NCBI GenBank assembly: GCA_002269645.1
Contig: NIVC01000525.1
Coordinates: 124,001 to 188,000 of the forward strand
Reading direction: 5' to 3'
DNA from: Macrostomum lignano
Taxonomy: Eukaryota
DNA: 64,000 nt
Below the pieces are notes generated by a model. The model was not told the DNA's origin and searched no databases. It saw only the letters and a list, made by a program, of their open reading frames with translations. Below are positions 44,001-47,000 of the stretch, piece by piece; within the stretch, counting starts at the first letter, position 1; every line of letters begins with the position of its first letter. Made by a program: the position numbers and the translations under genes.

Positions 44001-47000
44001 CCATTTTACAGCTCAGCTACCTACTGAACAATCTGCCATTATTCAACTCAGATACATACTGAACAATCTGCCATTTTACAGCTCAGCTACCTACTGAACA
44101 ATCTGCCATTATTCAACTCAGATACATACTGAACAATCTGCCATTATTCAACTCAGATACATACTGAACAATCTGCCATTATTCAACTCAGATACATACT
44201 GAACAATCTGCCATTATTCAACTCAGATACATACTGAACAATCTGCCATTATTCAACTCAGATACATACTGAACAATCTGCCATTATTCAACTCAGCTAC
44301 CCACAGAAAAATCTGCCATTATTCAACTCAGCTACCCACAGAACAATCTGCCATTATTCAACTCAGATACATACTGAACAATCTGCCATTTTACAGCTCA
44401 GCTACCTACTGAACAATCTGCCATTATTCAACTCAGATACATACTGAACAATCTGCCATTATTCAACTCAGATACATACTGAACAATCTTCCATTATTCA
44501 ACTCAGATACATACTGAACAATCTGCCATTATTCAACTCAGATACATACTGAACAATCTGCCATTATTCAACTCAGATACATACTGAACAATCTGCCATT
44601 ATTCAACTCAGCTACCCACAGAACAATCTGCCATTATTCAACTCAGCTACATACTGAACAATCTGCCATTATTCAACTCAGATACATACTGAACAATCTG
44701 CCATTATTCAACTCAGCTACCCACAGAACAATCTGCCATTATTCAACTCAGCTACATACTGAACAATCTGCCATTATTCAACTCAGATACATACTAAAAA
44801 TCTGCCATTTTACAGCTCAGCTACCCACAGAAAAATCTGCCATTATTCAACTCAGATACATACTGAACAATCTGCCATTATTCAACTCAGATACATACTG
44901 AACAATCTGCCATTTTACAGCTCAGCTACCTACTGAACAATCTGCCATTTTACAGCTCAGCTACCTACTGAACAATCTGCTATTCGCTTACTTCACGCGT
45001 TACATGTATGTTTGCAAATTCCATAGAGTTAATTGATCGGCTCTTTCAGACGCATCACATGCAGTGCCTGGCCGAGGAGCAAAACTTTGCCGGCATCGAC
45101 TGCAAAATATTCAATAATCCAAAGCCAATGACCATGGCCTTATCTGTCCTTGTGCTAATTGAAATGCTCAATGCTATGAACAGGTGAGGCGGATTAACTG
45201 CCTATTAATATTAACCTTGCTATTCTCCTTTGTTGTCCCGCCATTCCAGACCCACCAGGCGCAGTGCCTTGCCCAGGAGTCGCGATTTGAAGGCATCGAT
45301 TGCGCAATTTTCTCGCACCCGAAGCCGATGACGATGGCACTGAGCGTGCTCGTTGTCATTGAGATGTGTAACGCTATGAATAGGTGGGGGCGTGCGAGCG
45401 TGCGTCCAGATGATTACTTTTCGCATCTTTTATTGCCTCAATCATTCATTGCCTTTTCTCGGCGCCTCTACTAGCCCTCTAACCCCAAAGTACGATCATA
45501 GATGTACATTGGCTAATCGTCGCCCCGCCTCCTCCAAGTTCTGACCCTCTCCAGCCAATCAGAGAGTGCCCCGCTCTGATTAGATTAAACCTAAGCAATT
45601 CTAGCTAAGTGGGGAAATAATGAGTGGCCAGAATGTATAGAGAGGAGGCGATGGTATAGCGTATAAAGAGACCGTGGGCTTAGGCTTAAGTTTCAAGTGA
45701 ATTAAAAGCCGCATTTTTAGTATTGGGAAACTAGCAATCTGCGGCCCCCGTTGGCTGTCTATGAGCTGTCTCGTACATTTTAGCCTTGTACAGTCACAAT
45801 TGTTAATTTCTTAAGGGAAATGATTTTTAAAGCAAAAAGCATCCGTCCTGAAAGCCAGCTATCTAAGAAAGCCAGCTAGCCTAAGATATCAGATCCCCTA
45901 CTAGCTTCGACCTATTAGTGCACCTCGAAAAAACGCATAACCTGCTTCATTTGGAATTCAAAAGTCCTAAAGGAGAAATATATGGAATTTAGTGCTAAAA
46001 ACCGAAGAATTCCAATTCCTTCTTTTGCATCGAAAACGGGCCTAGAGCAAATTTAGTTGACCGTAACTGGTTGATTGGGGTTTCAAAGATAGGTTGGATA
46101 TTTTAAATTAATCCAGCGCTTTCCTCTATGCACGTTTTTCTATCCCATTCCGCCTATTGACTCATTCCTTGGGCGGCTGGTTGGAGAGAAGGCGAAACAG
46201 CGCGCCTTAATTTTGCAGTTGCACTTTACTAGGCTTATGCATTATTATAGCAGTCGCACGCAGGCTGGTTGCTATGACAACGATAATGTTTCTATTTGTT
46301 TTCTATCAATACAAAAGTGTAGAGAGACGGCGCCGCACGCCCCCTTCCTTAAACGCGCAGTTGTTTAAATTTGCAACGCCAAATTGTTGGCGAGCTGTAA
46401 GATTGCTCAATCGAATTTGTCCGGAAAATTTTCCCGCTGTGCACAAGCGGTTGGAAAGTCGGCGTGACCACACTCGCTAGTCCATAACAATGTACAGCGC
46501 TATCCCATTTTGCAAAGCTGCTAAACTAATTTAATCGCCCCCAATGTGACCAGCCTGCGTGAGACATGTTTAGGGGGATTAGGGAAAGGAGTAAATTGAA
46601 TTAAAGAGATGCAAGGAAGTTCTATTTCGTACAACAGCACAACATTATGCTGTAAAGCATTCGGTGTTTATTTTAGAAACCGGAAGCAACCCTATATACT
46701 GTTCAATTTCTCTCCAGCCAAGCTATTGTCATTTGTTCCTAACTTATTTTGTTTTGCCTGCCTCTTATAATACGAGCGTAGTGTAAATCAGAAAGCAGCA
46801 GCTAATGGGATAATTTGCGTTACATTGTCCTGGATTTGAGCGTGTGCTACTGCACGACTTTGCGACACTGCTTGCTGCATGCTGAATTTGCAGTTTTAGC
46901 TGCTTTTTCTCTTGCTTTCAATGCCTTCTGAAGGGTTGTTAATATCTATACGAGTATATAGATGATAGAGATTCATCACCTGTTTGCCCATCACAGTCTG

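What the first reader, a model, noticed from the sequence alone, without database searches (positions are those of the whole stretch)
45050..45383. Tandem duplicated, mutually exclusive SERCA exons covering the luminal loop and TM8
Seen: two 134-nt paralogous exons 66 nt apart, both with AG/GT sites and open frames; including both would shift the frame. Both keep the two luminal Cys and the TM8 IEMxN Glu, but differ in the loop ([22 protein letters not shown] vs [22 protein letters not shown]) and in EMLN vs EMCN. Known: TM8 Glu908 ligates Ca2+ site I, and the L7-8 Cys pair is redox/ERp57-regulated in vertebrate SERCA. Vertebrate SERCAs vary mainly at the C-terminus. Inference: tissue-specific (e.g. 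muscle vs housekeeping) isoforms from one gene.
Basis: partly seen in the sequence, partly recalled or inferred. Interest (0 to 1): 0.72.

Follow-up and report, generated by a model that had tools for sequence, protein, structure and literature searches.

The report
Ancient alternative exon pair in SERCA
The calcium-pump (SERCA) gene of the flatworm Macrostomum lignano carries two interchangeable copies of one 134-base exon, a swap shared by flatworms, molluscs, annelids, ribbon worms, brachiopods and bryozoans; it changes the pump's luminal regulatory loop, sits in gene databases, and I found no paper on it.

Summary
Window 45050-45183 (exon A) and 45250-45383 (exon B) are two 134-nt homologous exons of a SERCA gene (38033-48952, + strand, Macrostomum lignano). 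Both have AG/GT sites and the same phase. They are 67% identical in DNA and 33/44 in protein. Including both or neither breaks the frame.

Both copies are under strong purifying selection: against a second M. lignano locus, dN/dS is 0.008 for A and 0 for B. The same A-then-B pair, always 134 nt, occurs in the tapeworm, Capitella, Lingula and cuttlefish genomes. It is absent from a rotifer, a millipede and a third M. lignano paralog.

Public gene models give isoform pairs that differ only in this exon in at least 15 species of six phyla. A always has HM at positions 3-4 and Glu at position 9; B never has HM and always has Gln at position 9 (17/17 pairs). This points to one old lophotrochozoan duplication.

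Position 9 aligns with SERCA2a D878, a residue implicated in regulation by luminal Ca2+. I found no paper describing this internal swap.

Tissue specificity is untested. Use of exon A at this exact locus is not shown by transcripts. It is a real, ancient, under-described member of a known kind, mutually exclusive exons.

The parts
38033..48952 (+). Whole SERCA gene of Macrostomum lignano. Exons: 38033-38150, 38238-38338, 38443-38937, 39024-39734 (GC donor), 40918-41373, 41646-42006, 42469-42830, 8A or 8B, 48023-48140 (GC donor), 48242-48359, 48924-48952 (ends in the stop codon).
   Evidence: tblastn mapping and splice sites. The isoform-B model is 100% identical over 991 aa to PAA81520.1 BOX15_Mlig019375g6. 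Pfam shows a P-type ATPase architecture.
42469..42830 (+). Constitutive exon 7 (M5-M7), ending in phase 0 at ...NYYQL. It is the common splice donor for exon A or exon B.
42831..45049 (+). Intron upstream of exon A. It holds a 35-nt x 53 minisatellite at 43126-44984.
45050..45183 (+). Exon 8A, the ancestral-like copy: SERCA1a 871-914, Cys876, Cys888, Glu908; HM at positions 3-4 and Glu at position 9.
   Evidence: dN/dS 0.008 against the second locus.
45184..45249 (+). 66-nt spacer intron between the two copies, the shortest intron of the gene. Branch-point-like sites read by eye lie at most about 39 nt from the exon-A donor.
   Evidence: The second locus has a 53-nt spacer.
45250..45383 (+). 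Exon 8B, the derived copy: same residues covered, Q-A at positions 3-4, Gln at position 9, Glu at position 10. It is the copy used in the transcript-derived GenBank model of this locus.
   Evidence: dN/dS 0 against the second locus.
45384..48022 (+). Intron downstream of exon B. It holds a 46-nt x 21 minisatellite at 46968-47921.
48023..48140 (+). Constitutive exon 9. Its first base completes the Ser915 codon begun by the last two bases (AG) of exon A or exon B.

Best explanation
The two 134-nt exons are a mutually exclusive pair in the main SERCA gene of Macrostomum lignano. Each mature mRNA carries exon 7, then either 8A or 8B, then exon 9. The result is two pumps identical except for residues equivalent to SERCA1a 871-914, which are the distal half of the luminal M7-M8 loop (with the Cys876-Cys888 disulfide) and helix M8 (with the site-I ligand Glu908).

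Shown here: both copies are intact, equally long, in the same phase and under strong purifying selection. The same ordered pair exists in five other loci from four phyla. Isoform pairs differing only in this exon are annotated in many lophotrochozoans, some backed by cDNA or mRNA-like contigs.

Inferred:
(a) The pair arose once, before the lophotrochozoan phyla split. A keeps the ancestral character and B is the derived module.
(b) Exclusivity is enforced at least by reading frame. 134 is not a multiple of 3, so double inclusion or double skipping gives early stops and probably nonsense-mediated decay. In M. lignano the 66-nt spacer (53 nt at the second locus) may add steric hindrance, with the branch point too close to the exon-A donor.
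(c) Functionally, the swap re-patterns the segment between the two luminal cysteines: A has A-E-P/E, B has A-Q-D/E, and B often has Arg at position 12. In mammalian SERCA2a this segment mediates regulation by luminal Ca2+ and is the target of ER oxidoreductases. The two isoforms therefore most likely differ in their dependence on store load or redox state, or in luminal partner binding, more than in the Ca2+ sites themselves.
For: Anatomy and frame logic.

Selection: against the second M. lignano locus (L003), exon A has 16 base differences, 15 of them synonymous (dN/dS 0.008, P=2e-10 under neutrality). Exon B has 19 differences, all synonymous (P=1e-13). The flanking introns are unalignable.

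Genomic pairs, A upstream of B, all 134 nt with AG/GT: second M. lignano locus, Dibothriocephalus, Capitella, Lingula, Acanthosepion.

Single copy in a rotifer, a millipede and M. lignano paralog 3.

Isoform pairs with 98-100% identical flanks: five schistosomatid species, Clonorchis (plus a 4.2-kb Logan contig encoding the full-length A form), Spirometra (one locus tag), Mesocestoides, Littorina, Pomacea, Haliotis, scallops, oysters, Lingula, Tubulanus, Lineus, Watersipora, and two mRNA-like contigs of an unidentified marine animal.

The M. lignano GenBank models are derived from RNA-seq (PMC5730564). They use B at Mlig019375 loci and A at Mlig008428/013231 loci.

Diagnostic residues: position 9 is E in 17/17 A copies and Q in 17/17 B copies; positions 3-4 are HM in 17/17 A and 0/17 B; position 10 is D/E in 16/17 B.

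Position 9 aligns with SERCA2a D878. The E877L/D878L/E883L mutant loses part of its luminal-Ca2+-dependent transport, and C875A abolishes transport (PMC11826342).
Against: There is no read-level junction evidence for this locus. Exon A use here rests on a model (A0A1I8HXM0) that skips the gene's two GC-AG introns and so looks ab initio.

Bootstrap support for a single B clade is weak, 0.08-0.35 on 24-44 columns. In cuttlefish and in one unidentified species, A and B group with each other.

Net loop charge does not differ consistently between A and B, so the functional idea rests on residue position, not charge.

The spacer is 122-4023 nt in other phyla, so steric hindrance cannot be the general mechanism. 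The minimum spliceable intron of M. lignano is unknown to me.

No tissue or functional data were available.
Confidence: 0.85

Rival explanations
1. At this locus only exon B is used and exon A is a silent relic. After the SERCA gene duplicated in Macrostomum, one locus specialised on A and the other on B.
For: Transcript-derived GenBank models use B at Mlig019375g1/g6 (this locus type) and A at Mlig008428g2/g4 and Mlig013231g2. The only public A model for this locus type looks ab initio.
Against: The supposedly unused copies are intact in both loci, with AG/GT sites. Their dN/dS is 0.008 and 0 at a dS above 1. A relic would have collected replacements or frame breaks. The GenBank annotation was filtered and may list only one coding form per gene.
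Confidence: 0.08
2. The pair is real, but it arose independently several times by recurrent tandem duplication of the same exon in different phyla, and the shared B-type residues are convergent.
For: Bootstrap for one B clade is weak, and cuttlefish and one unidentified species place A next to B. There is a published precedent for independently arisen exclusive exons in helminths, annelids and molluscs: mrp-1, as discussed in PMC7434440.
Against: Three positions separate A from B in 17 of 17 pairs from six phyla. The order is A then B in all six loci read. The loop-only tree recovers a B clade. Same-species similarity is confined to the M8 half, as expected from co-evolution or local gene conversion.
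Confidence: 0.15
3. The exons are not strictly exclusive. Double inclusion or double skipping is a regulated unproductive splice that lowers SERCA output through mRNA decay.
For: Both outcomes create early stop codons. The B donor GTGGGG is weaker than the A donor GTGAGG.
Against: No public model carries both or neither, except one mis-built cuttlefish model that fuses part of A to B. Protein-level conservation of both copies is not explained by a purely regulatory role.
Confidence: 0.05

Closest known systems
coq-2 exons 6a/6e, mutually exclusive in helminths, annelids and molluscs (PMC7434440)
   Same: Two homologous internal exons of identical length, coincidentally also 134 nt, spliced exclusively. 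One copy resembles the pan-eukaryotic sequence and the other is lineage-restricted. The distribution includes platyhelminths, molluscs and annelids. The swap remodels a functional core without changing the rest of the protein.
   Different: It is a different gene and pathway. coq-2e also occurs in nematodes and tracks rhodoquinone synthesis. Its function has been shown by exon deletion, whereas no function is shown for the SERCA pair.
C-terminal alternative splicing of SERCA: vertebrate SERCA2a/2b and invertebrate equivalents in Artemia, C. elegans and Pinctada (PMC3527596, PMC6987452)
   Same: One SERCA gene yields several pumps. In lophotrochozoans the A/B choice is combined with several alternative C-terminal tails in RefSeq isoforms.
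   Different: The known events change only the C-terminal tail. [quoted passage not shown] The present event swaps an internal module, the L7-8 loop and M8.
Mutually exclusive exon pairs that swap a membrane segment in ion channels, such as SCN5A exon 6/6a (PMC4831019), and the exon clusters of muscle myosin heavy chain genes (PMC3912159)
   Same: Tandem exon duplication, equal length, one-of-two choice, and a change confined to one structural module.
   Different: They are other protein families. Their regulators and tissue patterns are known, which is not the case here.
Alpha-tropomyosin exons 2/3, where exclusivity comes from a branch point too close to the upstream donor (recalled from my own knowledge, not checked here)
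   Same: M. lignano has only 66 nt (53 nt at the second locus) between the two exons, the shortest intron of each gene.
   Different: The spacer is 122-4023 nt in other phyla, and flatworms may splice very short introns. This was not testable here.

Membership tests
Mutually exclusive exon pair from tandem exon duplication (criteria named in the title of PMC3228551: exon length, splice site and reading frame conservation, sequence homology) | Neighbouring exons in the same gene and on the same strand | tested here: met
   45050-45183 and 45250-45383, 66 nt apart, lying between exon 7 and exon 9.
Mutually exclusive exon pair from tandem exon duplication | Same or nearly the same length | tested here: met
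   134 and 134 nt. Also 134/134 in four other loci from four phyla read in full. The Dibothriocephalus B copy is 134 nt too, but its A copy has an assembly gap.
Mutually exclusive exon pair from tandem exon duplication | Conserved splice sites and the same reading-frame phase | tested here: met
   AG|...|GT on both. Both start in phase 0 and end after codon position 2.
Mutually exclusive exon pair from tandem exon duplication | Sequence homology between the copies | tested here: met
   67% DNA identity and 33/44 protein identity. Both align to SERCA1a 871-914.
Mutually exclusive exon pair from tandem exon duplication | Mature mRNAs carry exactly one of the two | tested here: inconclusive
   Met in relatives: isoform pairs occur in at least 15 species, including cDNA and mRNA-like contigs. 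In M. lignano, transcript-derived models show B at this locus type and A at the second locus. No junction reads for exon A at this exact locus were available.
Mutually exclusive exon pair from tandem exon duplication | Both together, or neither, is incompatible with a functional product | tested here: met
   The frame shifts, with stops 26 and 2 codons downstream respectively.
SERCA (P-type IIA Ca2+-ATPase) | P-type ATPase domain architecture | tested here: met
   PF00690, PF00122, PF13246, PF00702 and PF00689 all score above their cut-offs.
SERCA (P-type IIA Ca2+-ATPase) | Catalytic and Ca2+-site motifs: DKTGT, TGES, PEGLP (E309), E771, NLVTDG (N796/T799/D800), E908 | tested here: met
   All are visible in the assembled protein. 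E908 (IEM) is present in both exon copies.
SERCA (P-type IIA Ca2+-ATPase) | Close similarity to characterised SERCA pumps | tested here: met
The C-terminal 148 aa match PDB SERCA2 and SERCA1 chains at E=3.5e-61 to 8e-58. 75-82% identity to annotated flatworm and mollusc SERCAs.
SERCA (P-type IIA Ca2+-ATPase) | ATP-driven Ca2+ transport into the ER/SR | not testable with these tools
   This needs expression and transport assays.
Exclusivity by steric hindrance (alpha-tropomyosin type) | Distance from the upstream donor to the downstream branch point is below the spliceosome's minimum | tested here: inconclusive
   The spacers are 66 and 53 nt, shorter than the other introns I could measure: 86 nt or more in the window gene and about 73 nt or more in paralog 3. 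At the second locus only three other introns were mapped, all long. The species' minimum intron size is unknown. Spacers are 122-4023 nt in other phyla.
Exclusivity by competing RNA pairing (docking site/selector type) | Conserved complementary intronic elements | tested here: not met
   No inverted repeat is shared between the two M. lignano loci. The introns are unalignable. The fold of 45000-45450 is no more stable than shuffles, z=0.03. No Rfam family matches.

The most novel reading that the evidence does not exclude
A single exon duplication at the base of Lophotrochozoa, more than about 500 million years ago, gave the main SERCA gene a switchable luminal module. The derived B copy shifts the acidic residue of the inter-cysteine loop: the position aligning with SERCA1a 879 / SERCA2a D878 goes from E to Q, and the next position becomes D/E. 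These are among the residues reported to make mammalian SERCA2a sensitive to luminal Ca2+. The two forms would be pumps with different store-load or redox set points, deployed in different cell types and combined freely with the alternative C-terminal tails. That would be a lophotrochozoan counterpart to the vertebrate SERCA1/2/3 paralogs.
Probability: 0.3. Interest if true: 0.7.

Novelty: new member of a known kind. Interest (0 to 1): 0.55.

Why it matters
SERCA is one of the best-studied membrane pumps. Its known isoform diversity comes from gene paralogs and C-terminal splicing. An internal module swap conserved across six phyla identifies the M7-M8 luminal loop and M8 as a part that evolution has repeatedly kept in two versions. 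That gives a natural experiment on what this loop does, whether luminal Ca2+ sensing, redox control or partner binding, and it fits recent mammalian mutagenesis.

There are practical consequences too. Gene models, phylogenies and cloned cDNAs of lophotrochozoan SERCAs mix the two forms without saying so, and at least one model (cuttlefish) is mis-built because of it. Schistosome and tapeworm SERCAs have two isoforms that differ in a lumen-facing surface, which is relevant to anyone studying these pumps as drug targets.

Tried and rejected
(1) Competing RNA structures. An inverted-repeat search over both flanking introns of the two M. lignano loci found nothing shared. blastn found no conserved intronic block. 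Folding 45000-45450 gave z=0.03. Rfam gave no match. I rejected this as an explanation for exclusivity, although elements of 10-12 nt could be missed.

(2) Pseudo-exon or decaying duplicate. Rejected on dN/dS of 0.008 and 0 at a dS above 1.

(3) A formal tree to prove a single origin. Neighbour-joining on 44 or 24 columns recovers a B clade only for the loop columns, or after removing two lineages, with bootstrap 0.08-0.35. The first attempt with Biopython timed out. The single-origin claim therefore rests mainly on diagnostic residues and exon order.

(4) A net-charge difference between the loops. It is not consistent across taxa, so I dropped it.

(5) The first two homology searches, with short queries, returned only short fragments. 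The full-length query identified the species and the isoforms.

(6) Four genome look-ups found nothing on record: Hymenolepis, Elysia, Watersipora and Tachypleus. For Watersipora the RefSeq isoforms served instead.

(7) Literature. Searches combining SERCA with 'mutually exclusive exons', mollusc, Schistosoma, 'tandem exon duplication' or Pinctada found no description of this event. One search failed on syntax. The library lacks most subscription journals, so the event may still be published.

(8) Intron-size comparison across the M. lignano SERCA loci was only approximate.
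Full report
**1. What is in the window**

The region 45050-45383 holds two 134-nt segments separated by 66 nt. Each is preceded by a pyrimidine tract and AG and followed by GT. Only frame 0 is open in both. The copies share 90/134 bases and 33/44 residues, and 25 of the 44 base differences sit at third codon positions.

A search of PDB chain sequences confirmed the numbering: query residue 26 corresponds to SERCA1a 871 and SERCA2 870.

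**2. The gene**

Mapping all exons gives a SERCA gene on the + strand from 38033 to the stop at 48950-48952. It has eleven exon positions, two of which have GC-AG introns, with donors at 39735 and 48141. Exon 7 ends in phase 0 at 42830. Exon 9 starts at 48023 with the third base of the Ser915 codon.

With both copies included, the frame shifts and stops 26 codons into B. With neither, it stops after 2 codons. The assembled protein has the full P-type ATPase architecture and all SERCA catalytic and Ca2+-site motifs.

**3. The organism and public models**

A full-length search gave 100% identity over 991 residues between my isoform-B model and GenBank PAA81520.1, BOX15_Mlig019375g6 of Macrostomum lignano. 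That annotation derives from a genome-guided RNA-seq assembly (PMC5730564).

A UniProt model, A0A1I8HXM0, is 100% identical to my isoform-A model over 979 aligned residues. However, it skips the residues encoded next to the two GC donors. It therefore looks like an ab initio prediction and not a transcript.

A second M. lignano locus type (Mlig008428 and Mlig013231, 94% protein identity) is annotated from transcripts with an A-type exon.

**4. Both copies are maintained by selection**

The second locus (L003) has the same A-then-B pair, with a 53-nt spacer. Between the two loci the introns cannot be aligned. Exon A differs at 16 bases, of which 15 are synonymous. Exon B differs at 19 bases, all synonymous.

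By Nei-Gojobori counting, dS is above 1 and dN/dS is 0.008 for A and 0 for B. The probability of so few replacements under neutrality is 2e-10 and 1e-13. Neither copy is a relic at either locus. A third, more distant M. lignano SERCA paralog (L004) has a single exon 8.

**5. The pair is old and widespread**

Genomic loci from other animals show the same ordered pair, always 134 nt with AG/GT:

| Species (group) | Spacer between A and B |
|---|---|
| Dibothriocephalus latus (tapeworm; exon A interrupted by an assembly gap) | 146 nt |
| Capitella teleta (annelid) | 122 nt |
| Lingula anatina (brachiopod) | 699 nt |
| Acanthosepion pharaonis (cuttlefish) | 4023 nt |

A bdelloid rotifer locus has a single exon 8 between short introns. 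In a millipede the region is not even a separate exon.

Among full-length database proteins, exon 8 sorts into an A type (THHMQC-x-A-E-...) and a B type (TH-[Q/H/I]-[S/A]-QC-x-A-Q-[D/E]-...). Reading cluster members revealed many pairs of proteins from one gene, or one species, whose flanks are 98-100% identical and which differ only in this exon:

- Flatworms: Schistosoma bovis, S. haematobium, S. rodhaini, Heterobilharzia, Trichobilharzia, Clonorchis, Spirometra (one locus tag) and Mesocestoides.
- Molluscs: Littorina, Pomacea, Haliotis, scallops and oysters.
- Other phyla: Lingula, the nemerteans Tubulanus and Lineus, and the bryozoan Watersipora.

Some entries are cDNAs or mRNA-like contigs. 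Examples are the S. japonicum cDNA-library entry CAX73007 (B), a 4.2-kb Logan contig encoding the full Clonorchis-type A form, Pomacea AYH91738 (B), and two contigs from an unidentified marine animal that give A and B with identical flanks. Arthropod and vertebrate proteins show a single type.

**6. One origin or several?**

Across 17 lineage-matched pairs:

- Position 9 is Glu in every A and Gln in every B.
- Positions 3-4 are His-Met in every A and in no B.
- Position 10 is Asp/Glu in 16 of 17 B, but mostly Pro in A.

A lies upstream of B in all six loci read. At these positions the outgroups resemble A, so B is the derived copy.

Neighbour-joining groups 11 of 13 B copies from five phyla. 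Cuttlefish and one unidentified species place A with B, because the M8 halves of their two copies are identical. Bootstrap values are low, 0.08-0.35, as expected for 24-44 columns.

I conclude that a single duplication before the split of these phyla is the better reading, at roughly 0.7-0.8. Later local homogenisation explains the exceptions. Recurrent duplication is the rival.

**7. How exclusivity may work**

The frame rule is shown directly and holds in every species, because all copies are 134 nt.

In M. lignano the spacers of 66 and 53 nt are shorter than the other SERCA introns I could measure, which are 86 nt or more in the window gene and about 73 nt or more in paralog 3. Branch-point-like sequences, which I read by eye, lie at most about 39 nt from the exon-A donor. 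In vertebrates that would prevent splicing A to B. I do not know the minimum intron size of this species, and other phyla have long spacers. Steric hindrance is therefore at most a local addition.

I found no sign of competing RNA pairing.

**8. What the swap may do**

This part is inference. The exon encodes the distal M7-M8 loop with the Cys876-Cys888 pair, plus M8 with Glu908. All three residues are kept in both copies.

The differences that hold across phyla lie between and just before the two cysteines.

In mammalian SERCA2a the acidic residues E877, D878 and E883 of this loop are needed for the normal dependence of transport on luminal Ca2+, and breaking the C875-C887 bond abolishes transport (PMC11826342). 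D878 aligns with the A/B diagnostic position 9. From my own knowledge, the same disulfide is the target of ER oxidoreductases such as ERp57 and ERdj5.

The most likely role is therefore two pumps that differ in luminal regulation. Net charge does not differ consistently, so any effect would come from residue placement and loop shape: Pro at position 10 in most A copies, an acidic residue there in B.

**9. Comparison with what is known, and novelty**

Reviews read here describe invertebrate SERCA splicing as C-terminal only (PMC3527596; PMC6987452). Six searches found no description of an internal exon swap. The library omits most subscription journals, so absence is not proof.

The event is, however, already present in automated annotation such as RefSeq X-isoforms and in WormBase-derived entries. 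It is a new, under-described member of a well-known kind.

The closest analogue is the coq-2 6a/6e pair of helminths, annelids and molluscs (PMC7434440).

**10. Verdict**

The core interpretation is supported. Tissue specificity and function are open. Interest is moderate.

Noticed in passing
window 43126-44984 and 46968-47921; L003 13658-14273, 14599-15035, 15460-16081: Both introns flanking the exon pair hold large tandem arrays: 35 nt x 53, ending 65 nt before exon A, and 46 nt x 21. The second M. lignano locus has unrelated arrays in the same two introns, including (TCTG) x 110 ending 33 nt before its exon A. This could be chance in a repeat-rich genome or it could be splicing-regulator binding arrays.
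   Followed up: partly
window 39735-39736 and 48141-48142: Two GC-AG introns in the SERCA gene. Transcript-derived GenBank models use them, while UniProt/ParaSite models avoid them and lose 8 and 6 conserved residues respectively.
   Followed up: yes
L005 32178-32291 and 33015-33098 (Lingula anatina): Lingula has a second duplicated exon just upstream, covering the M7 half (YVGAGTVIASGWWF... versus YVGAATVGASAWWF...). RefSeq isoform X2 (P0442) uses the alternative copy. This is a likely second exclusive pair in the same gene.
   Followed up: partly
P0001 / L001 16127-20417 (Acanthosepion pharaonis): The deposited cuttlefish ATP2A model joins the first 35 residues of exon A directly to exon B. 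This is a mis-built model caused by the duplicated exon.
   Followed up: yes
L004 13467-13598 (M. lignano paralog Mlig003161): A third M. lignano SERCA paralog, 82% identical, has a single exon 8 of neither clear type (THHLQCTGDDTKFFGIDC...). Either it predates the duplication or it lost one copy.
   Followed up: partly
P0126 (marine transcript fragment): Its exon 8 is identical to the cuttlefish B copy, but the sequence after SLSENQSL differs strongly from the cuttlefish gene. It may be a chimeric assembly, another cephalopod paralog, or alternative downstream exons.
   Followed up: no
P0323-P0326 (metagenome-derived, unidentified animal): Four full-length SERCAs combine two exon-8 variants, both with the B-like AQDE motif, with two C-terminal tails. 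This is possibly a lineage with a different pair of copies.
   Followed up: no
window about 52751-54811, + strand: ORF pieces downstream of SERCA look like a protein kinase C gene: a pseudosubstrate-like [18 protein letters not shown] followed by C1-type HKF...[10 protein letters not shown] and [11 protein letters not shown] motifs. I recognised this from memory only.
   Followed up: no
window about 31800-34960: Long low-complexity tandem repeats upstream of the SERCA gene give spurious ORFs on both strands, such as (TDRQ)n and (LSTPVSS)n.
   Followed up: no
exon 8 of window versus L003: Synonymous divergence between the two M. lignano SERCA loci is above 1 in these exons, although the proteins are 94% identical. 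These are old paralogs under strong constraint, not recent duplicates.
   Followed up: partly
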